Source: Corallochytrium limacisporum Hawaii (taxonomy: Eukaryota; Protista; Pluriformea). From it: 64,000 nt of DNA. The DNA is taken from positions 1 to 64,000 of the forward strand of contig PDIP01000056.1 of NCBI GenBank assembly GCA_002811645.1, in the 5' to 3' direction. This document shows positions 41,149 to 62,033 of this stretch, in pieces (position 1 is the stretch's first letter; the number at the start of each line of letters is the position of its first letter). The notes under the pieces are model-generated. The model made no database searches. It saw only the letters and a list, made by a program, of their open reading frames with translations, and was not told where the DNA came from. The position numbers and the translations under genes were made by a program.

Positions 41149-41970
41149 ATCTCTGGCGGCCCACGATACTTGCTTCTGTAACCAGGACGCCGACCAGGAA
41201 AGAGGACGGCCCTGTTCTACCATCAAAGGTAGAAAACGACGACGAGGAGCTTCGGATAAGAAGACAATGAAAAGGAACGCAACAGGTAAGCAAACAAGCC
41301 TGAACCCGAGAGACAAGAACAAACAAAAGAAAATCAAAACCAAATCAACGAACCCAAAGATATCTTCATCACCATCAGTACCTTTTTTGTGTTCACATCA
41401 TGGTGTACCTGCTGGCCCGAGCCTCCTCCTCATGTTAGATCTGTACTCTTTCTCACCATCCGACCTCACCTGTCAACAGAGCTCCGCCATCGCCTGGTTG
41501 TGACTTCATGAACTCAAATCTGACTGACAGCATGGTTATCCAGGAACGCGTTGCGAGCAACACTCCGATCTTGCACCAATGACTCGTGCCCGTACCTCCC
41601 CTACCTTCCCTCCGGGAGGGTCCCGTCACCGCCACCGGGGCCCATTTATTTTCGGCGGGAAGGTTTTGGGTTTCACAGATAAAGGGGATTTATAGGGTTT
41701 TGACACGATGAGGGCCCCCCTCCGACTTGTGACGAGGCACCATACGCGCAAAACAAAAGCCACCCGTTTGTGTGCGGGTATTTTCAGCAGGATCACTGGC
41801 ACATAGACTATCCAATAAATAGGACCGTAAATTTGAAGATCGTTCTACTGACCATGTCCTTCCTCTGATGGTAACGAAAGTAGGACGCAGGCAATGGTAG
41901 CAGGCTCCAAACATTAGACTTGGGAAGAAAGCGGTTCGAAAGATTGCGGACGCTAAAAACACCAACAAAA

Positions 41971-43686: not shown

Positions 43687-43825
43687 ACGTACGTTCAATA
43701 GAAAAGCAAGTTGCATTCAGACTTCACGATAAGAAAGACATCCCTCGTTTCATCTCAACAGATCTCAACAGTGTTTATATTCTCGGTTAATTCGTTGAAA
43801 TTTTTATTGGGTGCTGCTTCCTTTT

Positions 43826-45844
43826 TCAAATCCCGGGCTTCGACTTCCATTCCATTGGACTGGACCCCGAGCCCAGAGACGTCGGTGGGGAGGTGTCCGC
43901 CACTGATCCCGTGTCCGGGGTATGCCCTTGCAGACCATATTTCTTCATGAACTTGAAGCCGCGGTGGATGACTGCCTTCTGAATCAGTGGTAGAATCTTC
44001 GGGTCGACCATGACAAAGCCGGACTGGCGATAAATCCAGTACCGTGGCACACTCCTCTTGTGCTTCTCCCAGTCGAACGCCTGTACGTTTGAGTTGCCTT
44101 CTTCAAATGCAGCTGGCATCAGGGCCAGGAAGAACGCGTAGTAGTCACCGGTCGAACTGCGCCACAGGTGGACACCGTAGTATGTCTTTTGGTACTTCAT
44201 ACAGTACTCGAAATGGGCCGCGGCCCGTTCTAACGATCCGTCCGTGTCATTGTTGGCCTTGATCAGTGTGGCCCATGGATGGGAGCACAGCTGTTCCATG
44301 GATCGTCCCGTAATCATACAAACCCATTGGCTCACGAAAGTGAAACGCAGCTTCATCAAATCGTATTGCTCAACACCAACTGGAGTTTCGTCCTTCAGAA
44401 TCATTAGACCCAAAGGCATCTGTTTGAGGAAGCTAATGTTCGACATATGGGCCACCAACTCCTGTACGGGTTGATCCTCGATTTCATGGTCGTCCAACGC
44501 TTGTTCCACAAACTCTTCGAGCTGGAACGGTTCGTGAATTGCATTACCAGGCGGACTGGCCAATTCAGCGTCGGCAAATTGGCCTTTTTCACCTTTCTGT
44601 TGAGCCTTAGCGTGCCACTCCTTGGCGGCCTCGATGGCCTTCTTCTTCTGTTTTTCGCTCTCTTCCAACGCTGCCTTGAGCGTGGCAATGTAGCCAACTG
44701 CAGTCCGCACAATTTGTGCTTTGGTCGGCTGCGGGTGACCACTGAGAGCAGGCAAGGACATGTGCAAGTCATGGAATGCATCCTTCAGGCGCTGTCGACT
44801 GCGGGCCTCTGCAAGTTTGTGTGACTGAATCCGCGTGGACATTCCCTTGGTGGTTCCCCCGGCTCCGCCACCCTGTTGTGCTCCTGCCGCGCCCTGTGCG
44901 CCACCGTTCATGCCACCACCGGGCATACCTGGCATTCCGCTGAGTCCTCCCATGGCGGCAGCACTGTTGAAGCCGCCTGGCATGCCACGGCCTCCCTGGC
45001 CAGACAGGCCCATCACGTCGGATGTGGATGCGAGCCCACCACCCAGGCGTGCTTGTTGCTGTTGCTGCGCCTGTACCAAGGGATGGTTCGCTCTCAGTGC
45101 GTCTTCGCTCTTAAGACCTCCAGTGGACGGGTTGAACGGGTTATATGACGGACTGATCCTTCCTCTCATTGCTCCCTGTGCCGCTGCTGCTCCTTGTCCC
45201 ATGTTTTGCAGGATGCCACCGCCAACTTCGGACTTGCCCCCGAGCGTTTCCGCGTCCACGTAGGGCATGGTGAATTGTTTAAAGTATTCCATCAGTGCCG
45301 CATCGCCAGTGTCACGCAGTGGGGCTGCGCCTCTGTTTTCGCCACTGTGACCGCTCTGCACCGATGTAGCGCTTGGTGACCGTCCGCCTTGGCTTGCCAA
45401 ATCCGCCTCGCTATTGGCCGCAGAGTTCGGATCTTTGCTGCCAATAAGGTCAAGAATTTGGTCCATGACATTAATAGTATTACCAGCCGTGTCCAAATTG
45501 TTGTCTCTTTCCACCTTTTCCATCATTCTTGTGTGGCTACCCAGTGCTGTCTGCATAGCCTCCGGGTAGACAAAGGCTTCGTCGTTTCTCGCCACGTACA
45601 CCGCTCCCGCGGCCAAAAGATCCGGCATGGACGCAATGTGGTTGCCGAATTCTGTGTAGAGGACGACCCGGGCCGGGATTTGATACCCAGGTCCAATAGT
45701 CTGGGCCCATGCCTTCTGGTGGAGGATTTTGACAATCTCCGCAGGGGTCTGTTTGGAGTCCAAGCTCAGGACCACGCCGCTATGGCTATAATCTCCGTTC
45801 CTGCGGACGAGGATGGAGAACATTTGTCCACCGACACCATTCAT
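43826..45844 (-). CDS. Transcription factor, DCX/ubiquitin-like + bHLH-ZIP + PAS-like (paralog A), 672 aa
   Basis: bHLH SHKLAEARSRQRLKDAFHDLHMSLP..KAQIVRTAVGYIATL followed by a coiled coil. The N-terminal VRRNGD..G..YTEFGNHIASMPDL..VYVA..EAF is DCX-like, and the C-terminal MPLGLMIL..FTFVSQWVCMITGRSMEQLCSHPWATL..WRSSTGDY is PAS-like. Confidence 0.88.
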   Translation of the reverse strand: MNGVGGQMFSILVRRNGDYSHSGVVLSLDSKQTPAEIVKILHQKAWAQTIGPGYQIPARVVLYTEFGNHIASMPDLLAAGAVYVARNDEAFVYPEAMQTALGSHTRMMEKVERDNNLDTAGNTINVMDQILDLIGSKDPNSAANSEADLASQGGRSPSATSVQSGHSGENRGAAPLRDTGDAALMEYFKQFTMPYVDAETLGGKSEVGGGILQNMGQGAAAAQGAMRGRISPSYNPFNPSTGGLKSEDALRANHPLVQAQQQQQARLGGGLASTSDVMGLSGQGGRGMPGGFNSAAAMGGLSGMPGMPGGGMNGGAQGAAGAQQGGGAGGTTKGMSTRIQSHKLAEARSRQRLKDAFHDLHMSLPALSGHPQPTKAQIVRTAVGYIATLKAALEESEKQKKKAIEAAKEWHAKAQQKGEKGQFADAELASPPGNAIHEPFQLEEFVEQALDDHEIEDQPVQELVAHMSNISFLKQMPLGLMILKDETPVGVEQYDLMKLRFTFVSQWVCMITGRSMEQLCSHPWATLIKANNDTDGSLERAAAHFEYCMKYQKTYYGVHLWRSSTGDYYAFFLALMPAAFEEGNSNVQAFDWEKHKRSVPRYWIYRQSGFVMVDPKILPLIQKAVIHRGFKFMKKYGLQGHTPDTGSVADTSPPTSLGSGSSPMEWKSKPGI

Positions 45845-47719
45845 TGTGCTGTGTTTTGGAATGCCAGAGGCTAGTCACTGTTCATCACCTCTGTCGAAAG
45901 TATCCAGAATATGCAAATTAATTCCTGATCCAAGTGTTTGTTTCTGCAAGATTACCGCAGGGTCACGTTCCCTTTGACATGTATGAGCTCACTTGCTCCC
46001 TTTCTTCGTTAACGTCTTCTTTAGGTCCTTTTAATCCAGCAATTTCTCCACCGCAGCCATTCCCCGTTCCCTTCTTCCTCACATACCTGCACCTATGACA
46101 CCAGTTTACGCAACCTTGTCCTTTGGTCCTGTGTTTCTGTTTCAAAAACTGTCCATTAAGACCATAGGGTACGTAACGAAGCTGAAACGCGAACACCACA
46201 AAGAACTGTCCCGCAATTGAACACAAAACTTGCACAGTCAGTCTCCAAAATTAACACCCAGGGAAAAAAAGAGACTCCAAAAACTAAAAATGGAACGTAC
46301 AGGAACAAAGGGCCCGCTCATTGACATGTCTCGCTCGATCGTTTTCTGTTGTCCCCAGCCTCCGGCCGTTCCCTCCCTCCCCAGAGGCTCCTCCGCTCCG
46401 CAAAAGGATTTTTTCCCTTTTTTTCAAGCGCAGCCCCCCCACCCCGGCTACTTCACCACCGCCTGCCCCTTCTTCCACAATACACAAGCAAGGGGACTTA
46501 GCGGTAGTTCTGTTTGAATATGCTTTCGCAACTCCTGACGCACCGAAGAGACCATGGACAGAGGAGAGTTGATGAAGCAAACACGAAACACGGACAGCTT
46601 GCAGAATAGAAACAAGGTTCAATGGAGGAGGGAATGGGGGGCGGAAAAAAGGGGAGCGGTCACATCAACCGGGGGCGCAGACGTGAAGAAGACTTAGAAG
46701 GGAAAAAAAGCCAAACTTTTAGCTAGCTTGGGGCGGAGAAAAAAATGCAGACTCGCGAGAGAGCGCCACACACACACGCGCAGAGAACTGCCGCCCGCTC
46801 GCATGGGGAGAGCAGGGGGAGGGGGAGAGGGAGAGAGAGAGAGACGGAAAGCGAAAGACGGGGGGGGGGGGGTTGGGAGGGGAGTGGAGAAAGGCCCGGA
46901 GCAGTAGTGCCGGAAAAGGAGAGGGAGAGGGGGGGAGACGGGGATGAACGCGGGTCCTGCCCCCCCCCTTTGAGAACAAATCGAAACTGTAACAGCTTTG
47001 CCTTCTTTTCGGTAAGTTATTTTTTTCTTTTTTTCCACGGGGACATCCGCTTGTTGGTGGGCTGTTTATAGTAAATATATGGATTTTAACAAAGCGGAAA
47101 TGATCAGGGCCCGGGAAAAGATAAAGGGGGAAGCCGTATCTTTCAGAGAAGCCAGCCAAGCCAGGACGTGCGAGGGAAGGGAAGGGGACGGTGGTTCACC
47201 CCCTGGAGCCCGGGGACGTGAAGGGTCGGGCAACGATGGTCGATGGTACCATTTGGCGGCACTCTTTCCGTTCCCCTTCTCTCCTTGTCCTCTCCCCCTC
47301 CCCTCCAACAAATTCGAACGGTGGGCGGGTACGCCTGTGAGCAGTGTATTTTGATAGATACCGGATCAGCTGGGCTTCGTCCTTTGGTCTTTTACTTTTA
47401 GCTGCAGACGTGCTCGCGTAGTCAAAATTTCAGTTGCTGTGTATAATAAAGCACCCCCAACAACCCCCCGAGGGGGCGAAGATTCGCTCCGTAACACAAA
47501 AGGAAGAAATTTGGTGCCAGGTTTTATCTTAAACGGGGTGTGTGAGTGTGGGTGTGAGAGCGATACGGACACGGACACAGAGAGAGAGAGAGAGAGAGTA
47601 AGACCGAAAGTGTTCACATAGATAGCTGGCTGTGTGTGTGTGTGTGAGAGTTGTGTTTGGCGCCTGCGTGTCACTTGCCAGCAGTTCTCTGGATTTCTTT
47701 TCTCGCGCCGGCCATCTCC

Positions 47720-47726
47720 TTATATA
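47720..47726 (-). promoter_or_regulatory. Putative TATA box for paralog A (implies a long 5' leader)
   Basis: GCTATATAAGG on the minus strand in GC-rich context, about 1.9 kb upstream of ATG 45844. Confidence 0.3.
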
Positions 47727-49810
47727 GCACAGAGATCCCCCTGGTCGCTTTGTGTTGACGTGCGTGTGTAGTCCACCCCCCCCTCCCCTGGTCGTCGTCG
47801 TCGCGTTTGAACGCTTTCGATCATCAGTGTCTGAATCTTGCAAAGTTGGACCCTGTGTGTTCATTCCTCTCCCGGTCTGTCTCCGCAACCATTTGTTGGT
47901 AATTGCGTATGTTAAATTAATGGAGACCAGTACCACGGGACTGACGAACGTTCGAGTGCTTAATTTGGACCGCACCTGAAATACGAATTTACTACCTGAG
48001 GACCCAATCGATACAACAATATCCCTAGACCACTATAGCACGACACCGGATTTACCACCGCGGTCAGGAACTGACACCCATCATCGATCTTGACGCATTG
48101 CGAGAGCTCGGAGACTTGCCCCCAAGACCCACACTGGTCATCGCCGGTGGATGGTCCCATTGTTTTATTTCTAAAAACCGTCCAACCGGCTTGGTGTTAT
48201 CGGTCTCGAGCCCCTGTCTATGATTCATAGGTCGGGAAAGGGGTTCGCCAGGACACGCTCATCGAGAAGGGCATCACATACAAAATGTACTGAGTTTAAG
48301 AATGACTTGTTGGAGAGATGGGTCACTGGGGTCTTGACCACGGTCGCGTGTGTAGGTTGAAAATTCTGAAGAATGTTCGCGTTCTACTTGACACAGGTTT
48401 TCCGCATACTGAACCCAATCTTCGACAGGTCCAATACTCCCAACATAGCCCATTTTCACCCTGGCTGGGTGGGGCTGCCATTGGCTGTCAAGTAGGCACA
48501 CAGATCGGGCGCGCCAAACTGCCAAACCCGCAGAGACTAAGACTGGACAGAAGAGAGAGAGAAAGGGGAGCGAATACTCGGCGACGACAACCAACCAGAG
48601 AAACGATACACATCTCTCTGGAATTCTTCATTCATTTTGAATATTAGGTATAAGCTCTGCCTAGGAATACAGCAAACTTGCGCAAGAAAAAATGCAGCGG
48701 GTCTTTACCCTTCCCCCGGTCCCCCCAATTCAGGTCATGGTCCCGCAAAATACGAAGATAAAAAAAACCAACCGAGATATAGGAACCCCCAAAACAACAA
48801 AAAAAAAAGACACCAAAAAAACAAAATGCTTCAAATCTAAGTTGCTGATAGGGGCGGAAGGGAAGGGCCCGGGGGAAGGTGGACCCAATTCCGGTACAAA
48901 TCTCTATCCGAAACTTGACAAGCAAAATGGCGATTGTTTAGTTCGGGAATATCGTGATGAGAGTGAGAGGAGGTAAGGGCCGGCTTTCTCAATTGGAACG
49001 GAAGAGAATATGGTTTTACGCAAGAACTGTGACGGCTTGAGTTGGTATTGGGTATAGAGTGGTCATCAATCGGAGAGAGCTCGACCTACGCGAATGGCCC
49101 CAATAAGACGGCGCAGAAAAATTGAAAGCAGCCGATGAAGGAATTTTGCGCGGAATTTCATGACGGACACAACTAGCGGTGACATCTCCGACTTCTTCGG
49201 TGACTCCTCCTGCGGATGGGCTTGTCGTATACTTGGTATCGCGCTTGTGGACAAGTTTACCATGGCACTCACAATAGGGACGCCTTGACGCCTTGGGGAT
49301 GGTTGGTGATGATCATTTGCATCCTGATTCATGGGGAAAAGTAAAATGGCCGTAGGGCGCAGAGCGTAGGCACCAGTCCATACACTGGAAACCGGACTTA
49401 GGGAGGGGGGTGAAGGAGAAAGTAGCCGGACGCATCAGAAAAAAACCCAAAGTGCGTGGAAATCATATCAAAGGGTTGGCCAACAAGTCCACTTTAGCTA
49501 AGATAAGAGGCATAAACAGACATGTGTCACTACTCAATTGAGATTTCGGACAGAATTGCGTACGGGTTTCCCCCTTCTATTTTTTTTTGTATTTGTTTTC
49601 GTTTGGGTCGTATTTTTGTACGGCTTTTTTTTTACTTTTTTATGGTGGCTTGGGTGATGACTGTTCAGCCCCATTTATCTATCACAAGCGAGCGGGGCAG
49701 ACGAGGCGAATTATCGCGCGCGCAAATGCAGAATCGCGGCGGGAAAAGGGGCGACGGAGGGAGTGGGTATCTCCACTCGCAAAGCGCCAGAAGCATATTA
49801 AACGAATAAA

Positions 49811-49833
49811 CACACACACACACACACACACAC
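49811..49833 (+). repeat. (CA)n microsatellite
   Basis: CA dinucleotide run. Confidence 0.9.
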
Positions 49834-52800
49834 AATTTTCGCCATTTTACCTGTCATAGTAAACGCATTTTCAGAATCAGCAAATCGTGTTACCTCAAGT
49901 AGTACCACGGAGGTGTATAACACTTACAAGTCCGGCCGCCCGCTTCGTTATTTTGAAAAACTTTTTCAAGAAAACGGAAAAAAAATAGAAAGGAAAGGAG
50001 GAACCTAAAAAGAATCGGTGGAGAAAATCATTATCCGCACCGCCCGCACTCTTTGGTGCACTGTCTTATCTCCCAGTTGGCCTTCCCCTCCCCCTTCTCC
50101 CCTCCCCCTCCCCTCCCTCCCCTTGTTCTCTCCCGTTCGTATCCCAATGCCTCCATCAATTCCGCCGTTTCATTGAAACAAAAACAAAACCTGGGTAGAA
50201 GCCATTCTTACGCAGCAGGCTGTCTGCAAGGAATCCCAGTATTTCTGAGTAAGATCATCTTCAGCTATTCCCTTGGTACGTAAGCAACTTCTGCTACGGT
50301 CGTGCGCAAATTCTCCTTCACCAGTCTCTAGCTTCCGTTGGGTTTGCTTGTTTTTCTGTACGATCGCGATCATGCTTTCACACACATACGCTCCCAAGAA
50401 AAGCAGATTTACAACAGACACAACCAGACAGGTGCGCCCACAGTGACTATAACATTGGAAGCGTACTGATGACTTACAGGCGAATGGTGCATGTGCACTT
50501 GACATGCACATGTACATCCGTGCCAGGTCGATGCGACGATGATGAGGATGATGGTACTCCGACCATGATACAGCAGAGACCGAGCTCCGAACCACGGCCA
50601 TGCTCCCACCCGAAATTACCATCAACAACGGGGCGTCCAGTCTGGACGGGGGCCCTGTGGGCTCGTCGGTTGTTTTGTTTCAACCTGTGTGTTTTCCACA
50701 CACTATATGATGATTGTGAAGGGACAGAAACCGAGCCCATTGAAACGAGTACGAGGTGATTAAAGTGTATGCAACAGTAACGGAGAATCCTCTTTGTAAC
50801 CACTAAGCATCCAATTTCCCAGAGTTTAAGTTATGGTCATCGGAGCTGCACAAACGTTTAGGGAAGTGTACGATGATGAGAAGATGACAAACGATGACAA
50901 GGATCAAGACGTACGCATGCCTGTGGTGCGGCGTGTCTTTGGTAACTGTCGATATCATTGCCGCGTATGTGTACTGCGGATGTGCACTTGCTTCCACAAT
51001 TTTGTCGCAGCCTCGTATCTGCGTTGAACTCGTTTGTGGCCTGTGAGTGATGACAGTCACCCTGCTGCCGCTAGATGGAGTGCCTCGGCGCGCGCTCTAA
51101 ATCTAGCATCCCCGTCCCATATGCCTTCATCAATCCCCTTTGGCGGACCCGTTTTGGGTACGTCCAGGTCGTCCAAACCCCAACCTCGACATACAATAGC
51201 CCTTGATTAGCATTGCGATTTAAGCTCTTGTAGTCTACGCTCTAAAACTACGGCTCTTCCCGTCATTCCTCTGAAACCGCTTTTTGCATGTGCACGCCCT
51301 CCTAATCTTACTCGTCACACACACGCGCACATCCTCCCAAAATCCATCTCTGCGTACTGTGCATTCCAAACCCCGCTTGTGTTCAATGTTCTACTCCCTT
51401 CGTATACCTCCTTTGGAATGCTGCCCTCGTCAATCACTCAATATGTCCCTTTATCACTTGGATGCTGCATGTGAATGTAGCTAGAGGACGCTGTGTTGTG
51501 ATCGGCATTTGTAGGAATGTGGGGGGGCAAATGCTTTGGATGCACGCTAAATGACTTTGTTCACTTCCACATTCATCGTTCATTAATGTCTCTCCACGAA
51601 TTTGGGTTCGATTCTCTTACACTCTTCCCATCATCACTCCCTCCATTTCGGGGAAATGATCTGGGATTGCGGGAGTCTGTGCAGGGGTACGCTTTGGGTG
51701 TTTTGACGCCGCTTGCAAGTACCGGGGGCAGGCCTGGACCACGAGCCGGGAGATGGAAGGGGGAGGGACTCCCCCTCTCAAATTGGGGGGGGGGACCCGA
51801 ACGGGATCGCCCCCTCGCCCCCCTTCTCCCGCGCGGAGGGACCGAGGGGGGGGGGGGTGCCAGAGCCAGAACGATTTCGGGGGAGCGTACCACAAGCACT
51901 ACCTCGACATCTGTCCGTTGCCTACTCTTGGGGGTTTTGGGAGGAGACGTGAAGAAGATAAAGGAGTGCGAGAAGGGAAGAGATCTCTGACTGTGTGCGC
52001 CTACTCTCTAGGTCTCCATGATTCAGTCCCTCTTACGGAGAATACGGTCCCCCAAAGCATACTTCTTGGATGTGTATAGATCGGCAGTTGTAAATGGCAA
52101 CTGCAATGATGATCTCGAGAACACTGACAGCGAAAGGTCTGAAGTCATGGTGAGCGGATAGTTAGTATAGGCACCAGTCCCTCAATAACACCAACGAACA
52201 CGTGGACCGGACACCAGCAATAATTCTATGGATGGATGCAATTGTGAAAATGGTAGTACAATGGATACTTTAGTCCAAGTTTTTTGACCGATATCCGTTT
52301 GCGGTCTTCGGTTTTTGTGGCATCTGCTTGTGAAACATCTCCGGGACTATGATGATCAACGGTGACACACGATCACACGAAGCGACCCCAGTCCCTATGT
52401 CCGCCCGGTATCTGAAACACTCACTCCATGCTCATCTACGGAGGCACCGCGCATCAAGAGTTGGAGTCCGAACTCTGGAAGTATGTGAACGTCCTCTCAG
52501 GTTCCCTTTTCCAGAAACCCGCACATGTATACGCCCGCGGATTATCAGCCTGAAAGCATGCTAGACTGCTTGTTTGCTTAATGTCTTGGCAATTGCTGGA
52601 GGCACTTTGAATCCCCTTATGATGACGACTAATACAGGTAGCTACCCGCCCACCCACCCGGCACAACGAGCGAAACACCCTCTAACAAGGAGCGGACGCG
52701 GGGAAGGTAGGAAGGGCTGGTGACACCGGAAAAATTGTATGAGGCCGCACCCTTGGCATTTCAAAGATTAACGATATACTTATCAAATGTATATTATCAT

Positions 52801-55800
52801 CTTACTATATAGATTCTTCACTGTGTGGTATATTTATAAATAGTCCGTATGATTAAATATTGTTCTTGGGACCCGCCTTTCCTTTCGCTCGCGGAAATGC
52901 TTCGTAAGACTTCGGGAAAACGCAAGAGTCCCCCCTGTCTCTTTCTGTGCGCGAGTTTCTCTGAGGTTCCCGGGTCACAATGCCATCGTGCTGCTCTAAA
53001 TTGGTTGCTGTTGCTACCGCGCGCACGACCTGAGGTACACTGCAGCTGCTCTGTGACGCACATTCTTGAAAGGGGATTCTGGCGCTCGTCAGGGACCACT
53101 TTGACGACCAGATTCAGGAACCTCATTACTCAGGATCTCACACGGACCTCCATACCGACATTGGGAATCACAATGGTCCCCGGTTGCTGATGATCCACGG
53201 AAGGTGATTGGGTCTTCTCGATAAAACCGACCATATGTCGGCAACCACTACCACCACAACTGCTAGCATCGTTGTCATCGTCATCGTCATCCTCTACATG
53301 TGCTTCCCTTCCCTTCTCTGCTGGCTCTCCGAAGCTTCCTTTGGAGGAACACGCGCAGTATGTGCAAACATAACCGGTTGCCCATCTGCAAAGCACCCCC
53401 TCTCCCTGCACTTCCCTCCCAGTAACCCCTTCGCCCAAGGCCTTTCCTGGGACGCAAACACAAAAGTGGAAAAAAACAAGTGATAGTTTCATGCCCGTTT
53501 TGGCACACGATTGCTATCTAGCTCATGGCAAAAAGACAGACACACATGCACACAGAAGGAGGTGCTTCACAGATCTCACCCTACCACATTCCAAGACTCC
53601 CTCGTTTGGAAAGTGAACGGAGAGAAGTCTACCTGCCAGTCACCGTCAAAACGGAACAGTCCGCGGAACCGCGCGCCACACACAGACGACACCGGCAATC
53701 TCCTAACCGTGTGAGTTCCACTAACGATCGTCCACCCACGCACATATCACGGACCCAAAAATTTCAAGAGTCGGCAAGTATAGGAAGAGACGGGGCAGCC
53801 GAAACGGCCACTCGGCAGTAGCGTATCGATGGAGTGCCATGGCGGAAAAGGCCGAAGCGAGGACAAGGCTGAGCAAACGAACAGTCATGCAAAGCATCAG
53901 CAGATCGTTGAATCTCTCGGGCTGGAACCCATTTTATGATTAGTCAGTATGCTATTAACACCTGATTTTAACTATTTTATATACACAAATCTTAAAATTT
54001 TATGGAAGTCGGTATATAATTAGGGCCACTTTACCACAGGTGGTACTGTCGCACTTACGCGGCAAGAGTTGCCCTTCACATTTTCTGTGCTCCCCTCCAC
54101 CACCATCTTCCCTTTTTTGTCTCCGTGGCCTTTTCGTTTTCTTGCTGGTAGGGACGCAAGCGTACACATTTTCTATACGTTTACATAGTATATGAATATC
54201 TGAATTCTCTTCGGTTGCTTCTTTAACTTTGTTGGCCTCCGAAGACCATGACGCGAGATCTATGATAAACAGTCTTCCTAATTTCTTCGGTTGGCTATAA
54301 CGCTACCATAAACACCTTCACTCCCGAGGCAACGAAAGGGATGAAATCGCACTTCCCATTTTTCGTTGCTCACCCGTGTAGCCGAACAAACAAAGTTTTC
54401 TAACCACAAAATTCCAGGATTCATAGTGAATAAACTGCCCGATTTTTTTTCGCCGCCTCCGATTGGAGCCATACGCATATGTGCCCGTTCGATCGGTACT
54501 TACACGTTGGCGATGGGTTCGTTTCTGGTTGTAACGATTACACCCCAGAAACCAGAGATGATGAATTACACGAAACTAGCACGGCTGCGGCTGAGATTTT
54601 CCATAAAATAGTATGCCCAAAGTCATACTCAGATCTGAATACACTTCCTAGACCAGTGCTTTGTTATGAGTCGCTGCTGCCGGTGTCAAACACCGGCTAG
54701 TAATACAGAGATGCAGTGGCGGGACCAGTGGTGCGGTGGTGCAGGTCTTTTCCGTTTCAACTCTGAATCTATAAAATTTGCCAGTCCTTTCTGATAGCGT
54801 TTTTCACAGACGGAGAGATTTCTTTACGTACATTGAGTATTGAAATTCCCGGGAAAGGGTGTGCTTCTCCATATCTCGGAGTTCTGCAGCTAGCTTCATG
54901 CTGACAATAGCGGCGTGTCCGTTCAAGTGAGCTCCCTAAATTTTATGGGGTCATCAAATCCAGTGTGTCACTAAGGTATTGTTTGTGTACATCCGCCGTG
55001 AATTGACTGGGTATTTTGTTTTGCCCCTCTCGCTCTCTCTCTCTTTCTCCCTCTTGCGGTCGTGCCTTCGTATCTTTTCCCTCTTCCCATGTAATGAAAC
55101 GTAAGTTTTCCTTTCCTTGCTTGGCTCGTTCGGTTGCATCTTGCCCGGCTCCTCGGTTTCGGAGAAAAAGGGGGAGCAGGGAAGAGGGAGGGGTGTGGGG
55201 GGGGGAGGGACAGAGAGATTGACGTATGTCGAATCTCGATGCAGTGGTTCCATCAGTACTGTACCAAGACTATGGGATATAAAGGCATCGCCCTTGCTCG
55301 GACCGTGCTGGTCCAGTACCTGTCCTGACCCGTAACCCCCCTGCTTCCCCCCCTCACTCCCCCCCATCCCTTCTTCCCCAGCTCTCGACTCCGTGTAGGT
55401 GGCAAAGGGATCAGTTCCATGGTACAAAATTTGGTATATTCATTATGAACTTTGCAATCAAGGTACGCGTCAACGGTTTCTGTGCTCGCAACTGCAAGAG
55501 AACGTAACGGCAACAACAATTCACGGGTTGACCGATCCTTTCAATATTTGTCCCGTCACGCATCCCATATACTCCTCTCTATTTGGAAGGATTGGCCCGT
55601 TTAATACTGAATGCATTGACAGGACTGCAATGTACTTGTTAAATTGCAACAGAAAAAGGACATGAAATGAGAACTTCGCCACGTAGAGATAACGGATTCG
55701 GTGGTCTGAGAGTCCGCTGACTCCCTCCCTCCGCCCCTGTTCTGGCAGCGGCCCGTGTCAGATTTGAGTGGGGCAATATGTGACTTCGTCAGTCACACAC

Positions 55801-56826
55801 AGTCACCAGTTGGTCGCGAGAGAGGCCACTGCCGGGTGCAAGTGGGTGATGGCTTGAGTACGAAATCAGTGCCACATTAAGAAAGGTGTTCGATGGACTA
55901 GTAAGCAGGAAGTTAAAACTACGGTGAAGACAAAAAAGGTGAAACTGTGATTTAGGAGCACCGACGTTGTCGGTCCGGGCTCGCAACACTTTTTCTCACA
56001 ACTTCCAACACTGGTAGGCTATACAATAGGACAATTGACGATAATCTGTATGGCGTCATGTACAAATTTATACGGTCGGTCCGTACTACACGTTCCCATT
56101 TGTTCCTCGTTCCCAGTAAACACTCGGGAAGATTGTGAATGGTACATTAAGTACTAGTTTTTGCGTCTCTGTGTCCCGGCAAACAGTGCGCAGCAGTACG
56201 CATCGCTACCACACACCTCGCACAGCCGCGCCCGTTTCTGTGCGGCTTGTGGGCTGCCGCTTTCTTCCTCCTTTCGTCTACGAATGACCCGCACTGTGGG
56301 CGTAACTGACTGGCACGGAAAATCTGCACGGCCGCGGTAGACACATAACCCCGACTTTTTCACCCCACACACAGATACTCCCCTCAACCACAAAACCAGC
56401 GCAAATCACTGACCGCGACACCCACCGTGAGCCAGTGCTAATGTTCCTTTTAGTCTTGTCCCTTTTTGGCGCATAGGAGGAGTCTCAGGGGACAGAGACT
56501 TTCGGCATTTCGGAAGGCGGGGGAGGGAAGGAGGAGAGTGAGGGACGGGGAGGGGAGAGAGGAGGGGAGGACGGGTGGTAAAAAGAGGGGGGGGGGAGGG
56601 GAGGAGACGATGTGGGGACGGGAGGAGAGGGGGAAAGAAGGAAGAGAGGACCAGAAATCTGCACCGCGAAAGGTCGGACGTTCCGCTAGATGAACACCGT
56701 TGTTTCGGGAAGAGAGAAGAAAAGGGAAGGAAAAAAAAAGGTGGGGAAGGGGCCTGCGCAGTAGGTCCCTTCCCCACTCCCCACCTTCCACCCCTCTTGC
56801 GATTGTGTGCCGTAATCTACGACACA

Positions 56827-56862
56827 GAGAGAGAGAGAGAGAGTGTGTGTGTGTGTGTGTGT
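56827..56862 (+). repeat. Compound (GA)n(GT)n microsatellite
   Basis: A GA run directly followed by a GT run, about 1.1 kb upstream of paralog B. Confidence 0.9.
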
Positions 56863-57937
56863 AAAGAGCGCGGAGGAGGAGGTGGACCACACGGGCCAAA
56901 AAGGCGGGCAGCGGGGAGGAGATGTGATCCCGAAGAAACCAGTGTTTCATCCTTGGCCGAACCGTGACTACTACTTCCCCCCGGAGAAAAGAAGGTGGGA
57001 GGGGGCTTGCGCGGGGACACAGGGGAGCAACAGCAAGGTCTCAATTCTTGAGTTGAAGGAGAGTGCAGCCCCTCCGCAGAAAAAAAAAATCTGCACACTT
57101 TCTATATGCTTTGGACAACAGGGGATAAGTTGTGGAGAAGTTCGTTATTTGATTCCTGGAGCCGATAGTGGAACAATAAGATGATAAAGAAACCGTAATT
57201 GATTCAAATACCCAGAACGGAATTGGAAGAACGAGCCATTAGGTACCAGCGCAGATTGTTCGGAAAGAAAAAAGAGAGGGGCAGCCCCCCCCCCCTTCGT
57301 TCTCCCTTTTGTCTTGCCCCATTTTTCCCCTTGGCAAAATGAATGACGAAGACAGTTGAGGCTCCAAAAAAAAAGTACCCAGTTTGCAGCGGCGTGGCTG
57401 GCTGCGGCACAGTGAACTAATATGTCTCGAGACCTAATCGAGGCCTTAGGGAGGAGGGCGATATGTGGTGTCGCGGAGCGTTTACTTGGTAGGGCACTTG
57501 GTGTATTCGATTGTGTTGGCTACCGCTGAAGTCTTTTTTATTCCTCCGATTCTCTTGTAGTCTGGGTTATCCGTGTGGATGGTTGTGCTGACGGCCGTTA
57601 TTCGCATTGAATTGGAGCGTAACGAACAGAGTCTTGAGGCGCTGGAGTTTACTAAGTAATCGCAAGTACTTTGTTGCTATTTCAGGAACACATATCAGCC
57701 CATGAGTAATCCTGGTCTACTGCCAATAAAAAACTCTCTGTCACTCTATTCGCGAGTTAACTGCAGAATTGTCCTATAAATGAAGTGACACCATCATTTA
57801 GTATCGAGAACTATACTTCTATTCGTGTACTGGGTGTAAATATCCGAAGGATTTCTTTGTTGAGTATTTCACCGTCAGACAACGAGGGATAGAATAGAAA
57901 CGAACTCAAAATACCGGGCGTAAATCTCATTGACGAA

Positions 57938-59884
57938 ATGAACGGCGGCAACGGACAGAACTACCATGTCATGGTCCGCCGGAATGGTAACCAAACCTCA
58001 CCCGGCGAGTTCTTCGTGGTTGATCCCCTGAAGACTCCTCAGGACATTGTACGCGCCATCCATCAGAAGGCCTGGAGTGCGGAGATTGGCGCCTCCTATG
58101 AGACACCGAAGTTGGTGATGCTGTACAGTGAATTTGGTAATGTTATTAACTCCATGCAGGACCTGTTAAATGCGGGTGCAGTGTTTGTTGCTCGGGATAA
58201 GGAAGCCTTTGTCTTCCCAGAGGCAATGCAGAAAGCCCTTGGAGGCAATTCTAACCTGATAGAGAAATTGGAAAAGGACCAGTTCACCGCAGTCATGGCA
58301 AACTCGTCCAATGTTACTGATGAAATCTTGGCATTACTCGGAGAGGCACCAACTTCAGGTTCTGAAGCAGGATCACAGATGGGCAGTCCCGGCGAGAACA
58401 CGACCTCAACATCTGTCAACAGCACCCGCAACACTGGCGGCAGTTCCGGCCCCGGTGGTATGCAAACAGAACCGAGCTTCATGGATGTTTTCAACCGCTT
58501 CAACCTACCCTACATGGATGACACACTCGGGGGTCGCACAGTTAATGTGGGTGAAGCCGCAGCCTTACGAAAAGAGAAGAGGTCGCTGCAGCAGCAGGCG
58601 GCCCTGGTTGCCAACGGACGACAAGCGAACCAGGGATCATCTGATGCGAACTTGGCCATGCCCGGGTTCGGTGGTGCCCCCGGTAGTGCTGGTAGTATGC
58701 AGGGTGAGAGTCCATCGGATTTCTCGGCTTCCCGCGATACCGGCGACTCTGGCTCACCATCACCTCGTGTGGCAGCGAACGGCGCTGGGCCTTCGATTGA
58801 ACTCCGGCCCCCGACATCGAGTACGTCAGTTAAGAAAGAGGGTGGCAGCTCAGATTCCAAGGCATCCAGCCGCATCGCATCACATAAACTGGCAGAAGCC
58901 CGCAGTCGACAGCGTCTAAAGGACGCTTTCCATGATTTGCACATGTCTCTGCCCGCTCTGAGCGGCCATCCGCAGCCGACCAAGGCCCAGATTGTGCGCG
59001 CAGCAGTGAGCTACATTGGCAATCTGCGCGGGGTCGTACACGAACTCGAGCGCCAGCGTGACCGTGCAGTATCCGCGGCCATGCAGATGCAAAAAGAATT
59101 GCACGATGCCAACCAGTTGCGCCGTACCAACAGCATGTCACGCAGCAACCCACTTTTAAAGAACGAGGAGCATAATCCGGAACTTATGCAGACTATTGTG
59201 CAGGAGGCACTGAGCGAGCACAAGATTGAGGACCAGTCTGTCCAGGAACTGCTTACCAAAATGTCACACATTTCTATCAATGACGAAGTGCCCGCGGGCA
59301 TGTTGATTGTCGAGGACACCACACCACCGGGTATGCCCACAGATCTGAACAAGATGACTTGGACCTGGCTGAGCCAGTGGTGCTGTTTGCTTGCCGGTGA
59401 AAAGATGGAACAGTTGACTGGTATTCCGTGGCCTACGTTAATGCAGAACCACAATGACTTCGATCGAAAGGGCGGCCAGAGACGTATGGAGGCATCATTT
59501 GACTACTGTATGAAGTACCGTCGCACGTACTGCGGTCTGCACATGTACAAACCACCTGGTGGTGAATATCTTGCTTTCTTCATGTCCTGTATGCCTGCCT
59601 CATTTACTGGAAACGAGAATGTAGATGAAATTGATTGGGAGAAGCACGCAAATAGCTGTCCTCGGTATTGGATTTGCCGACAGTCTGGCTTTGTGATGGT
59701 CGACCGGAACGTCCGGCCTCGTTTGCAGCGGGCCATCATCGCCCGCGGTAATCGCTTCATGGCCAAGTACGGGCTTAAAGGCTACGGAAACCAGCCACAT
59801 GACACTCCAATGGCGACGGACGCTGGCGTCCTTGAGCCAAATCATCTACCTACGCAACCAAGCTCTGATCCGCTGCAACTCTAA
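57938..59884 (+). CDS. Transcription factor, DCX/ubiquitin-like + bHLH-ZIP + PAS-like (paralog B), 648 aa
   Basis: Aligns end to end with 43826-45844: MNG.., VRRNG, HQKAW, EFGN, FPEAMQ.ALG, an identical 40-aa bHLH core, IEDQ.VQEL, YCMKY, PRYWI.RQSGFVMVD, RG..FM.KYGL.G. Confidence 0.88.
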   Translation: MNGGNGQNYHVMVRRNGNQTSPGEFFVVDPLKTPQDIVRAIHQKAWSAEIGASYETPKLVMLYSEFGNVINSMQDLLNAGAVFVARDKEAFVFPEAMQKALGGNSNLIEKLEKDQFTAVMANSSNVTDEILALLGEAPTSGSEAGSQMGSPGENTTSTSVNSTRNTGGSSGPGGMQTEPSFMDVFNRFNLPYMDDTLGGRTVNVGEAAALRKEKRSLQQQAALVANGRQANQGSSDANLAMPGFGGAPGSAGSMQGESPSDFSASRDTGDSGSPSPRVAANGAGPSIELRPPTSSTSVKKEGGSSDSKASSRIASHKLAEARSRQRLKDAFHDLHMSLPALSGHPQPTKAQIVRAAVSYIGNLRGVVHELERQRDRAVSAAMQMQKELHDANQLRRTNSMSRSNPLLKNEEHNPELMQTIVQEALSEHKIEDQSVQELLTKMSHISINDEVPAGMLIVEDTTPPGMPTDLNKMTWTWLSQWCCLLAGEKMEQLTGIPWPTLMQNHNDFDRKGGQRRMEASFDYCMKYRRTYCGLHMYKPPGGEYLAFFMSCMPASFTGNENVDEIDWEKHANSCPRYWICRQSGFVMVDRNVRPRLQRAIIARGNRFMAKYGLKGYGNQPHDTPMATDAGVLEPNHLPTQPSSDPLQL

Positions 59885-62033
59885 TGGAGATCAGGCAGAT
59901 CGGATCACCAGTGTTCGTTCGAATCCCCGTGCTTCCTTTGCTTGAAATCAAAACAAACCGTATCATTATCAAATCTTAAATCGACGTTTTATATCCAGAA
60001 CAAGAATAAAAAGGAAAGAAACGTATAACCAAAACAAAGATGAATGTAGACGTCTTCAGTTGGCCGTGCGAACAAAAGCTTAGTACCGAAAGACGCTGTG
60101 CCCTCCTCCGGTCCCGTTCCCCGGGCAGAGGCGATCTCAAATTGTACCGGTCCCCCTCTCGCTGCCGCCGCTCTCCCCCTGAGTAACACGACAGAGTGCA
60201 CTTGCATCCGGAGAAACGGGCTTCACTGCTGATTCACTTAACAATCAAAATTTTATAAATTTTAAAAATTACAATCAAAAGGGTACTTGATCACAACAGT
60301 CTGTGGAGTATCAATAACCATATTTGTTAGGTTTTTGGGATAGCGGTACATTGAGTACGTAACACTCGCGTGGTCCTTAAATCAATTGTTTTGCACTAAT
60401 TTTCTTGAAAACAGCTGTAAAATATTGAGCCAAACAATGAAGCAGGCCCGGAGCGGTACGAGTTATTGATACATTGGAATGCAACATATCAATGCTGGAG
60501 ACCCTCAAACCAATACTGACTCAATACATGCCGTTAAATAACCCCTCCCCCCCCCACCAGGGCAACCTTGCATTTTTCGGCTGCCGCAAGCGTCGTGAAT
60601 CGTTGCGCCGTGCGCGCCTGCAAACTGGGGATGCAAAATTTTCTGAGCGGCTGGTACTGTGAAATCGCGAGTGTGAGGGAGGACTGGGCCCGTCTCTTTT
60701 TTTTTTTGGGCCGTGGTGCAATTTGCGAGGGATCTTCTCAATCTCTCAGTTCCCTACAATCATTCACAGAAGTCCATATCTTCACTATGGCAGCGTTAGC
60801 CGAACCGTGAACAAAGGAGAAGACAGGGGAGCCAGTAGCGGAGGGGAACATCGCTGGACACAACACTGTCCATGTCCGGGAGTTGCAGATTTATGCAGCA
60901 AACATCGCGCATCGGCAAACCAAACCCCCCAATATCCTATCTTTTGTCACATACCTTGTGTGCAGAGAGCGGGCAGAGAGACTTTCGACGCAAGGACAGA
61001 GGCGGCCACAAAGACGTTTCAAACGGAGAACGCGAAGAAACCTGACCGACACCGTCAACTCACCCTTGCTTTGGACAGAACATCACTACCACTGGGCCTG
61101 TACTCATCCCACGCGCGAAATTGCACACAGCGCGGGTGGGTTATTGCATCGTACGCAGCCGCCGCTGGTGCACCACGTACCCAATACTCTCGGCCTCTCC
61201 TTCCCTCCCCCTCCCCCGCCCCGCGGAAGCGCGAGGGTAAAAAAAAAAAACGAGAGCGGGGAGGGGAGGTTCTCTCGGTGTCTCTCACCAATGCCACCCC
61301 GTACCACCCTGACCCCCCCCAACACGCATACACCCGCACACCCTCACACACACGCACACACACACACAGCACACACAAGCACACACAACCCTTCTGGCAC
61401 TTCTACCCTGCCCTTCCCGGCGGACTTGGTGTGATACTGATGGATACCATCGCAGACAAGACCGACAGACTCGACCCACCCGAGCAAGTCACCCCACCAC
61501 CACTCGAAATCGATTATGTGGGTAGGCACCGCCGCCACTCTCCAAGGCCTACTGCACGCTCGAGGTAGAGATACAGATAGACAACGAAGATTCATAGATG
61601 CGGGCAATAGACAAGAACCTATTTCCTTTACAGTCTACGTCTGCATTTTGCGCGCGTGTGTGTTGTTGGGATGTGTGTGTGGGATGAATGAGGTGCGTCT
61701 GCGTCGCATTGACTTTGAGCTAGATGGTGCAGTTACGTTGCGTGTTGATTGACCAGGACATTGAGAGAGCATCCAATCGACTCGCCGCAGTATACCCCCC
61801 AGCGGCACCCAACATCTTTTCTGTCCATGGCGATGATCTTGCGCAAGGAGGCGTATACATTTGTCTCATGAAATATCGAGCAAACGTTCCCCAAACTCAA
61901 TAGTCAAAGTTTGACAACAATTCTCTTAAGAGGAAATGATATATGGATTAAATGATTATTATGCCTTATATAGGGAGCAGCGGGGAAGGGGGGGGGAGGG
62001 GGACTTGTGATAAAAACGAGAAAAATAGACGGG

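What the first reader, a model, noticed from the sequence alone, without database searches (positions are those of the whole stretch)
43826..59884. Divergent pair of transcription factors with an unrecognised DCX-like + bHLH-ZIP + PAS architecture
Seen: two head-to-head paralogues that each combine three parts. The first is an N-terminal domain matching the doublecortin/beta-grasp pattern (RNG..G....Y..G..I.S..DL....YVA..E.F). The second is a Myc/Max-class bHLH with a zipper-like helix, and the third is a single C-terminal PAS-like domain with conserved Cys/His/Trp/Met. The 40-aa bHLH core is identical in both proteins while many codons differ synonymously, which indicates strong purifying selection rather than recent conversion. 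Known: animal bHLH-PAS proteins have an N-terminal class C bHLH, two PAS domains and no zipper or DCX domain. Inference: an independently assembled one-component sensor-TF family, possibly a heterodimer with shared DNA specificity but diverged ligand pockets, and possibly tethered to microtubules or a partner via the DCX-like domain. This is the best candidate for an undescribed system in the window.
Basis: partly seen in the sequence, partly recalled or inferred. Interest (0 to 1): 0.8.

Follow-up and report, generated by a model that had tools for sequence, protein, structure and literature searches.

The report
Diverged doublecortin-like bHLH-PAS factor pair
Two back-to-back genes in Corallochytrium, a single-celled relative of animals, are fast-evolving members of an apparently unpublished family of transcription factors that joins a doublecortin-like fold, a Max-like DNA-binding domain and one sensor-type PAS domain.

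Summary
Two intronless, divergently oriented ORFs (43826-45844 minus, 672 aa; 57938-59884 plus, 648 aa) are 43% identical. They share a 40-residue identical bHLH core despite saturated synonymous change.

They are not an isolated invention. They are the most diverged members of a family with at least eight copies in this genome (Corallochytrium limacisporum). Relatives occur in Syssomonas and five ichthyosporeans, plus a filasterean fragment. The shared layout is an N-terminal beta-grasp domain, a short linker motif, a bHLH, a coiled coil and one PAS domain.

- **N-domain:** clearly homologous to the family's (hhalign 94.7%, E 6e-8). Its only Pfam-level similarities are weak ones to DCX-type families.
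- **C-domain:** its link to the family's flavin-type PAS domain is only suggestive (P about 0.01), backed by position and weak concordant leads. The pair has lost the family's CxxC motif.
- **Expression:** gene B appears to be transcribed unspliced.

Best reading: dimeric, probably CACGTG-type E-box factors with a derived PAS module and a protein-docking beta-grasp domain.

I found no paper on this architecture. This scan had already reported the same family from two paralogues elsewhere in this genome (s1-573247, s1-559840). Microtubule tethering, heterodimerisation and ligand sensing remain untested.

The parts
43826..45844 (-). Gene A: intronless ORF, 672 aa (P0002)
45560..45823 (-). A, N-terminal beta-grasp (DCX-like) domain, residues 8-95
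   Evidence: hhalign of the A/B N-domain against the family N-domain: 94.7%, E 6e-8; column shuffles reach the real score in 0 of 120
45251..45295 (-). A, conserved linker motif (F..F..MPYVD), residues 184-198
   Evidence: aligned across the family
44672..44839 (-). A, bHLH, residues 336-391
   Evidence: Pfam HLH 25.3 bits; inverted DNA repeat I1, 80%
44537..44671 (-). A, helix continuing from helix 2 (coiled-coil-like linker), residues 392-436
   Evidence: heptad view; 20% identity to B
43919..44536 (-). A, C-terminal PAS-like domain with N-terminal helices and an insertion before the last strand, residues 437-642
45845..57937 (.). 12.1-kb gene-free divergent interval with GA/CT microsatellites
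   Evidence: only low-complexity ORFs; no Rfam family; no upstream similarity between the two genes
57938..59884 (+). Gene B: intronless ORF, 648 aa (P0001)
57728..59990 (+). Extent of transcript-like contigs for gene B (about 210 nt 5' and 100 nt 3' of the ORF, no joints)
   Evidence: the runs are only guessed to be RNA
57959..58222 (+). B, N-terminal beta-grasp (DCX-like) domain, residues 8-95
58478..58519 (+). B, conserved linker motif (F..F..LPYMD), residues 181-194
58865..59032 (+). B, bHLH, residues 310-365; the 40-aa run identical to A is residues 315-354
59033..59170 (+). B, helix continuing from helix 2, residues 366-411
59171..59788 (+). B, C-terminal PAS-like domain, residues 412-617

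Best explanation
A and B are an old, fast-evolving duplicate pair within a holozoan family of transcription factors. The family layout is an N-terminal DCX-like beta-grasp domain, a short conserved linker motif, a Max-like group B bHLH, a coiled-coil helix and a single C-terminal PAS domain.

Shown: family membership through the N-domain, the bHLH and the overall layout; strong purifying selection on the DNA-binding core; likely transcription of B.

Inferred:
- Each protein binds DNA as a dimer at a class B E-box (CACGTG-like), through the His-Glu-Arg basic-region residues.
- Because the 40-aa core is identical, A and B share DNA specificity and can pair through the HLH either with themselves or with each other. 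Partner choice would be set by the diverged coiled coil and C-domain.
- The C-domain is a remodelled PAS. It has extra N-terminal helices, an insertion before the last strand, and has lost the family's CxxC. It acts as a dimerisation or signal-input module coupled to the bHLH through the helix.
- The beta-grasp domain docks a partner protein.
For: **Family and layout.** Six further paralogues in the same genome carry the same domain order. Several have Pfam PAS_9/PAS over or near cut-off, and one has Pfam DCX at 19.9-23.6 bits. Members from other species have the same layout.

**N-domain.** The A/B N-domain against the family N-domain gives hhalign 94.7%, E 6e-8. None of 120 column shuffles reaches that score.

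**Tree.** The family is separated from fungal bHLH outgroups (SH-aLRT 95-98). A and B are sisters (97-100).

**bHLH.** Pfam HLH is over cut-off. The closest solved relative is Max (E 1.9e-5), with aligned His, Glu and Arg.

**Selection.** dN = 0 against pS 0.66 in the core.

**C-domain.**
- hhalign against the family PAS: E 0.0086 over 109 columns in register.
- hhalign against paralogue C212: E 0.0035.
- Shuffle control: 1 of 120 reach the real score.
- Language-model neighbours are PAS clusters, score 0.92-0.94.
- More than 45 of the top 50 Foldseek rows are LOV/PAS, though none is significant.
- The strand and helix order of the model fits PAS.

**Family PAS.** It matches MmoS and NifL FAD-PAS and LOV domains at E 3e-15 to 1e-8.

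**Transcription.** Transcript-like contigs cover exactly gene B.
Against: - HMMER profiles of the family N-domain and PAS barely detect A or B (E 0.013-0.03 in a 60-sequence set).
- No Pfam PAS or DCX model hits A or B. The best is Ubiquitin_DCDC1 at E 0.1.
- Both AlphaFold models came from two-sequence alignments and are poor (pLDDT 34 and 50), so no fold is established.
- The N-domain profile's best PDB sequence match is a TRPM5 segment (E 0.001), ahead of TgDCX (E 0.32).
- The helix after the bHLH has few leucines and is only 20% conserved between A and B.
- DNA binding, dimerisation and any signal input are untested.
Confidence: 0.7

Rival explanations
1. The C-terminal domain of A/B is not a PAS domain. 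It is an unrelated, lineage-specific fold that replaced or overwrote the ancestral PAS after the duplication.
For: An exhaustive HMMER search of 1.84 billion representatives found no relative of this domain. No Pfam hit appears even at E 10. The family PAS HMM scores it at only 6.9 bits. The AlphaFold model has pLDDT 34.
Against: The domain sits in the same position behind the bHLH and helix as in all paralogues. hhalign gives P about 0.01 in register over 109 columns. Matching landmarks are Y/W-x-G, the Gly of 'RRDG' and the final GF. PAS-only neighbours appear in both the language-model and the Foldseek lists.
Confidence: 0.25
2. A and B no longer sense anything. The PAS-derived domain serves only as a second dimerisation surface, and the pair acts as constitutive, developmentally regulated E-box factors.
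For: The family's conserved CxxC and third Cys are lost in A/B. The domain evolves quickly (dN 0.43). PAS domains are described as an additional dimerisation motif in animal bHLH-PAS proteins (PMC5064789). The 12-kb gene-free flank suggests complex transcriptional control.
Against: Half of the C-domain residues stay identical between A and B despite saturated synonymous change. These include several Cys, His and Trp that could line a pocket. Nothing here tests ligand binding either way.
Confidence: 0.35
3. The N-terminal domain is a generic ubiquitin-like, RA or PB1-type beta-grasp used for oligomerisation or partner binding. It has no doublecortin-type tubulin binding.
For: In an unbiased structural search the RA, plexin UBL, DCX and Par3-NTD domains tie at Z 4.4-5.3. 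DCX Pfam hits are sub-threshold. There is a single domain rather than the tandem DCX pair.
Against: The only Pfam families hit by family members are DCX-type: Ubiquitin_DCDC1 in 5 of 11, best E 4e-4, and DCX in one at E 4.9e-5. TgDCX is the top Foldseek row and the only beta-grasp protein in the PDB sequence search.
Confidence: 0.5
4. The identical bHLH core reflects recent gene conversion between the inverted copies rather than selection.
For: The two copies lie 12 kb apart in inverted orientation, an arrangement that allows conversion. The bHLH DNA is the most similar stretch (157 nt at 80%).
Against: There are 19 synonymous differences in the 40 identical codons (pS 0.66, dS about 1.6). That is close to the saturated values elsewhere in the genes.
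Confidence: 0.03

Closest known systems
Unnamed DCX-like-bHLH-PAS proteins of Corallochytrium, Syssomonas and Ichthyosporea (for example Sphaeroforma arctica SARC_01821 and SARC_00488, annotated only as 'BHLH domain-containing protein')
   Same: Same domain order, homologous N-domain, the same linker motif, the same HK.(A/S)E.RSR basic region and a helix leading into a C-terminal domain.
   Different: A and B sit on a long branch. They lack the CxxC and third-Cys signature of the family PAS. They carry about 45 extra residues before the C-domain and an insertion before its last strand. They have no orthologue in any other sampled species.
Animal group C bHLH-PAS factors (ARNT, HIF, AHR, CLOCK, SIM); one member is reported in Capsaspora (PMC5064789, PMC5800844)
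   Same: A bHLH DNA-binding and dimerisation domain combined with a PAS module in one polypeptide; dimeric sensor-type factors.
   Different: In the animal proteins the bHLH is N-terminal and is followed directly by two PAS repeats. Here the bHLH is central, is Max-like (group B), is separated from a single PAS by a coiled coil and is preceded by a beta-grasp domain. The family's PAS resembles flavin/LOV-type PAS by sequence.
Max/Myc/Mlx group B bHLH-Zip factors
   Same: The closest solved sequence relative is Max. The His-Glu-Arg E-box contact residues are present, and helix 2 is extended.
   Different: There is no canonical leucine zipper, and there are large extra N- and C-terminal domains.
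Single-PAS bHLH proteins of diatoms and other algae (RITMO1/bHLH1a; bioRxiv 10.1101/271445)
   Same: A protist factor that combines bHLH and PAS.
   Different: No relationship was tested here. A DCX-like domain is not mentioned in that paper's text as searched.
Doublecortin (DCX) domains of microtubule-associated proteins, including Toxoplasma TgDCX
   Same: Beta-grasp topology and weak sequence matches to Pfam DCX and Ubiquitin_DCDC1. TgDCX is the best Foldseek row.
   Different: The matches are below Pfam thresholds for A and B. The domain is single rather than tandem, it sits in a transcription factor, and tubulin binding is untested.
Aureochromes (bZIP-LOV) and fungal White Collar-1 (recalled from general knowledge, not tested here)
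   Same: One polypeptide joins a dimeric DNA-binding domain to a flavin-type PAS sensor through a helix.
   Different: They use a different DNA-binding domain. The LOV photoactive cysteine motif is absent from this family (alignment A8).

Membership tests
Holozoan DCX-like-bHLH-PAS family (unnamed) | N-terminal domain homologous to the family's 'VTLF.NDG ... RLFT..G.EI ... VVS.GE.F' domain | tested here: met
   hhalign 94.7%, E 6.3e-8 over 84 columns; 0 of 120 column shuffles reach the score
Holozoan DCX-like-bHLH-PAS family (unnamed) | bHLH that groups with the family's rather than with other bHLH proteins | tested here: met
   The family including A/B is separated from fungal outgroups at SH-aLRT 95-98 (quick trees with long branches)
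Holozoan DCX-like-bHLH-PAS family (unnamed) | Conserved linker motif F..(N).LP..D between the N-domain and the bHLH | tested here: met
   Aligned in A, B and most members
Holozoan DCX-like-bHLH-PAS family (unnamed) | Single C-terminal PAS domain homologous to the family's | tested here: inconclusive
   hhalign E 0.0086 and E 0.0035 against C212; 1 of 120 shuffles; the HMMER profile gives only E 0.013 in a small set
Holozoan DCX-like-bHLH-PAS family (unnamed) | CxxC motif plus a third Cys inside the PAS | tested here: not met
   A/B have MQNHNDFD / IKANNDTD at that position
Animal group C bHLH-PAS | N-terminal bHLH followed directly by two PAS repeats (PAS-A and PAS-B) | tested here: not met
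   The bHLH is at residues 310-365 of 648. There is one C-terminal domain, and no second PAS by Pfam or alignment
Group B bHLH (Max/Myc/USF type) | Pfam HLH over threshold, with His5-Glu9-Arg13 in the basic region | tested here: met
   25.3 and 28.1 bits against 20.7; alignment to Max places H, E and R at the contact positions
Group B bHLH-Zip | Leucine heptads continuing from helix 2 | tested here: inconclusive
   About five amphipathic heptads, but Leu at only two 'a' positions in B and one in A. No coiled-coil predictor was run
Doublecortin (DCX, PF03607) domain | Match to the Pfam DCX model over its gathering score | tested here: not met
   No DCX hit for A or B. The best is Ubiquitin_DCDC1 at E 0.1 for B. 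Paralogue C267 reaches 19.9-23.6 bits against 22. Among family N-domains, 5 of 11 hit Ubiquitin_DCDC1 and 1 of 11 hits DCX, mostly below the cut-offs
Doublecortin (DCX) domain | Beta-grasp fold closest to DCX structures | tested here: inconclusive
   The model has pLDDT 50. TgDCX is the top Foldseek row at E 0.15. In VIA-align, RA, DCX and UBL domains tie at Z 5.0-5.3
Doublecortin (DCX) domain | Binds tubulin or microtubules | not testable with these tools
   Needs co-sedimentation or imaging
PAS fold (Pfam clan) | Match to a Pfam PAS model, or a confident PAS-fold structure | tested here: not met
   No Pfam PAS hit at E 10 for the A/B C-domains. The model has pLDDT 34. The weak leads all point to PAS
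LOV / flavin-binding PAS | Flavin-binding signature (GxNCRFLQ-type motif with the photoactive Cys) | tested here: not met
   The motif is not present in the family alignment or in A/B. The family PAS is nevertheless closest by sequence to the MmoS and NifL FAD-PAS domains and to LOV domains

The most novel reading that the evidence does not exclude
The pair forms an obligate A/B heterodimer with a single DNA specificity, in which a remodelled PAS has acquired a new ligand or metal pocket built from A/B-specific Cys, His and Trp residues. The DCX-like domain holds the factor on microtubules until a signal releases it. This would be a cytoskeleton-gated sensor transcription factor of a kind not described in any lineage, descended from a family that predates animals and was not detected in them.
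Probability: 0.12. Interest if true: 0.85.

Novelty: new variant of a known kind. Interest (0 to 1): 0.55.

Why it matters
bHLH-PAS factors such as HIF, AHR and CLOCK are central environmental sensors of animals, and their origin is debated. This family shows that unicellular relatives of animals built and expanded a different bHLH-plus-PAS design. It has a Max-like bHLH, one flavin-type PAS and a doublecortin-like fold, which I found described nowhere in a transcription factor. Corallochytrium alone has eight copies.

The A/B pair gives a natural contrast inside that family. The DNA-reading surface is frozen at 40 of 40 residues, while the putative sensor and pairing surfaces are remodelled. 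That makes it a useful case for asking how new signalling inputs are wired to an old DNA specificity.

Corallochytrium can be grown in culture, so localisation, DAP-seq and cofactor tests are practical.

Tried and rejected
1. **Word-index protein searches.** The whole protein B returned only A and B. The family alignment search was limited to 8000 low-complexity candidates. The Syssomonas N-domain region gave only 67 candidates and itself. None of these says anything about distribution.

2. **Exhaustive HMMER search with the A/B profile**. All 35 hits other than A and B match the bHLH region only, so neither flanking domain of A/B has a detectable sequence relative at E 0.001.

3. **AlphaFold on two-sequence alignments**. 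I ran both jobs before I found the family.

4. **HMMER family profiles against A/B**. Scores are marginal; only profile-profile comparison links the N-domains.

5. **TRPM5 as a relative of the N-domain** (E 0.001-0.008). I judge it spurious. It rests on an 'RLF..GV.I'-like stretch, each domain-level E-value is about 0.2, and it disagrees with the predicted strand order. I did not disprove it.

6. **Recent gene conversion of the bHLH.** Rejected.

7. **Autoregulatory E-boxes.** CACGTG is depleted in the window (5 against 16 expected), with only one in the 12-kb interval.

8. **Shared promoter elements.** There is no inverted similarity outside the coding regions.

9. **Rfam.** Nothing in 43000-60500.

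10. **Exact look-up of protein A on other contigs.** Not on record.

11. **Pfam PF25510 in the whole genome.** Nothing was found, but the control genomes were also silent, so the result is uninformative.


Full report
**Observation**

The coordinates bound two complete, intronless ORFs:
- A: 43826-45844 on the minus strand, 672 aa.
- B: 57938-59884 on the plus strand, 648 aa.

They are transcribed away from each other across 12,093 bp. That interval holds only low-complexity ORFs and GA/CT microsatellites and no Rfam family.

The proteins are 43% identical (E 1e-168). Conservation is modular:

| Region | Identity |
|---|---|
| N-terminal 135 aa | 51% |
| Linker | 28% |
| bHLH | 86% |
| Helix after the bHLH | 20% |
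| C-terminal 200 aa | 51% |
| Tail | 13% |

Both pass Pfam HLH. The longest identical run is exactly 40 residues (B 315-354). It contains 19 synonymous and no non-synonymous differences (pS 0.66). Synonymous sites are saturated over the rest of the genes. The duplication is therefore old. The identical core reflects purifying selection and not recent conversion.

**Organism**

Earlier notes of this scan name the genome as Corallochytrium limacisporum. One paralogue from this genome is 100% identical to a EukProt protein named Clim_evm56s156, which fits. Neighbouring genes are ordinary eukaryotic ones:
- MetE;
- a peroxidase-NADPH-oxidase fusion;
- a polybromo-like protein;
- a GT4 glycosyltransferase.

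**Not a lone pair but a family**

A six-frame search of the whole genome with B found other bHLH loci. A search with Pfam DCX hit a single place in the genome. That place lies in the same ORF as one of those bHLH loci, on contig C267. The 508-548 aa protein there carries, in order, DCX (19.9-23.6 bits against a cut-off of 22), a weak HLH and PAS_9 (E 3.8e-5).

Five more ORFs have the same layout, on contigs C185, C212, C232, C45 and C111. PAS_9/PAS is over its cut-off in C232 and C111, and there is a weak Ubiquitin_DCDC1 hit at the N-terminus of C212. In the full alignments all share four elements:
- an N-terminal 'V.L..N.G ... LFT..G.EI ... VVS.GE.F' domain;
- a short 'F..N.LP..D' motif;
- a basic region 'HK.(A/S)E.RSR';
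- a helix leading into the C-terminal domain.

The exhaustive HMMER search with the A/B profile against 1.84 billion representatives returned, besides A and B, only proteins matching the bHLH region. Many of these have the same architecture. They come from Syssomonas multiformis, Chromosphaera perkinsii, Creolimax fragrantissima, Sphaeroforma arctica, Ichthyophonus hoferi and Amoebidium parasiticum. There is also a C-terminally truncated fragment from the filasterean Pigoraptor chileana, one metagenome protein and one Logan contig. Where they are named at all, the names are 'hypothetical' or 'BHLH domain-containing protein'.

Within this genome, the family's N-domain and PAS profiles find only these paralogues.

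**Are A and B really members?**

- **N-domain: yes.** Profile-profile comparison gives 94.7% probability and E 6.3e-8 over 84 columns. The real score is 45.8, against a maximum of 23.3 in 120 column shuffles.
- **bHLH: yes.** In two quick maximum-likelihood trees the family including A/B separates from fungal bHLH outgroups (SH-aLRT 95-98). A and B are sisters (97-100) on a long stem of about 1.8 changes per site. They sit inside a weakly supported, Corallochytrium-only group with C212, C111 and C45 (80-88). These are quick trees with long branches, so only the A+B pairing and family membership should be relied on.
- **C-domain: suggestive only.** hhalign against the family PAS gives E 0.0086 over 109 columns in register. 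Against the C212 C-domain it gives E 0.0035. One of 120 shuffles reaches the real score. HMMER profiles give only 6.9 bits.

The weak leads on the C-domain all point to PAS:
- It sits at the same position in the architecture as the family PAS.
- Language-model neighbours are PAS clusters at 0.92-0.94.
- The strand and helix order in the low-confidence model is two strands, three helices, then strands.
- The Foldseek list from that poor model consists almost entirely of LOV/PAS chains, none of them significant.

I put the PAS reading at about 75%.

Compared with the canonical members, A and B differ in three ways:
- They have about 45 extra residues, predicted helical, before the domain.
- They have an insertion of about 14 residues before the last strand.
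- They have lost the CxxC and third Cys that are conserved in the canonical members.

**What the domains are**

The bHLH is closest to Max among solved structures (E 1.9e-5). The alignment puts His, Glu and Arg at the positions that contact the CACGTG E-box in Max. That those residues are the contacts is established knowledge of group B bHLH proteins. Binding by A and B is an inference.

The canonical family PAS is unambiguous. It matches the FAD-binding PAS domains of MmoS (E 2.9e-15) and NifL, and LOV domains of ZTL, phototropins and aureochromes. It lacks the LOV cysteine motif.

For the N-domain:
- The only Pfam families touched are of the doublecortin type: Ubiquitin_DCDC1 in 5 of 11 members (best E 4e-4) and DCX in one (E 4.9e-5).
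- The model (pLDDT 50) has beta-grasp topology.
- TgDCX is the top Foldseek row, at E 0.15.
- In an unbiased structural search, RA, DCX and ubiquitin-like domains tie at Z 4.4-5.3.
- The N-domain profile against PDB sequences gives TRPM5 at E 0.001 and TgDCX at E 0.32. I regard the TRPM5 match as spurious but have not disproved it.

'DCX-like beta-grasp' is therefore a fair label for the fold. It is not evidence of tubulin binding.

**Expression**

Two small public runs from 2015, from two studies, each hold one contig that covers 57728-59990 or 57733-59960. That is gene B plus short flanks, without joints, and nothing from the neighbouring DNA is present. The runs are only guessed to be RNA, but this pattern is what a transcript would give. 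The second run differs at 10 listed positions (11 by the contig table), six synonymous and four not, and none lies in the bHLH. Gene A could not be checked because the read-laying cap was one call.

**Mechanism (inferred)**

- A and B are dimeric E-box factors with one shared DNA specificity.
- The identical HLH permits both homo- and heterodimers. Selectivity would have to come from the diverged helix and C-domain.
- The PAS-derived domain is coupled to the bHLH through the helix, as in other PAS-effector proteins. It either takes an input or only strengthens pairing.
- The beta-grasp domain docks a partner.

The canonical paralogues, with CxxC in a flavin-type PAS, look more like redox or oxygen sensors. 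A and B have left that state.

**Comparison with known systems and novelty**

Animal group C bHLH-PAS proteins have an N-terminal bHLH and two PAS repeats. One such gene is reported from Capsaspora (PMC5064789; PMC5800844). bHLH-PAS proteins are known from diatoms and other marine algae (bioRxiv 10.1101/271445).

I found no paper that combines doublecortin or DCX with bHLH and PAS, or that describes these ichthyosporean and Corallochytrium proteins. The main text of the Corallochytrium genome paper does not mention bHLH, PAS or doublecortin. The held library is incomplete; the 2011 Capsaspora transcription-factor paper could not be read.

This scan had already reported the same family from paralogues C212 and C267 (s1-573247 and s1-559840). 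My tests were run independently and agree. What this window adds is the most diverged pair, their frozen bHLH and their head-to-head arrangement.

**Limits**

Absence from animals, choanoflagellates and fungi is therefore not established.

Noticed in passing
window 46680-47762: Five same-strand GACGTG hexamers lie within 1.1 kb upstream of gene A, out of 20 in the whole 64-kb window. The palindromic E-box CACGTG is depleted window-wide (5 against 16 expected), with only one copy (52199) in the 12-kb interval.
   Followed up: partly
G000:C267 (L011:328-1854:-), C232, C185, C45 and relatives P0005, P0006, P0015, P0026, P0031, P0038: Canonical family members conserve a CxxC motif, plus a third Cys on the following strand, inside a PAS that is closest by sequence to FAD-binding PAS and LOV domains. 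This hints at a redox or metal site. A and B lack it.
   Followed up: partly
whole genome G000: Pfam DCX (PF03607) found only one place in the 24-Mb genome, inside the C267 bHLH-PAS paralogue. No conventional doublecortin-domain protein was detected at this sensitivity.
   Followed up: no
L017 (Logan contig of run SRR33270664) and P0007 (Pigoraptor chileana): A 544-aa protein with the N-domain, the bHLH and the start of the PAS groups with the Pigoraptor fragment (SH-aLRT 96 in one of the two quick trees). The family may therefore reach Filasterea. The organism behind the Logan contig is unknown.
   Followed up: partly
window 45845-57937: A 12.1-kb gene-free interval lies between the two factor genes in a compact 24-Mb genome. 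It is rich in GA/CT and CA/TG microsatellites.
   Followed up: partly
window 41920-43686 (+): A GT4-family glycosyltransferase gene (Glycos_transf_1 plus Glyco_transf_4) ends 140 bp from the stop codon of gene A, tail to tail.
   Followed up: no
window 11364-16937 (-): A 1857-aa ORF fuses an animal haem peroxidase domain with a ferric-reductase/NADPH-oxidase module (dual-oxidase-like architecture).
   Followed up: no
window 31506-38729 (+): A 2407-aa polybromo-like protein with six bromodomain matches and two BAH domains sits in a very GC-rich stretch (up to 68% GC at 36-38 kb).
   Followed up: no
window 57976-59864: The second public run differs from the window at 10 listed positions in gene B (11 by the contig table): six synonymous and four non-synonymous (L31Q, S105P, A251V, S643A). 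It probably comes from another strain.
   Followed up: partly
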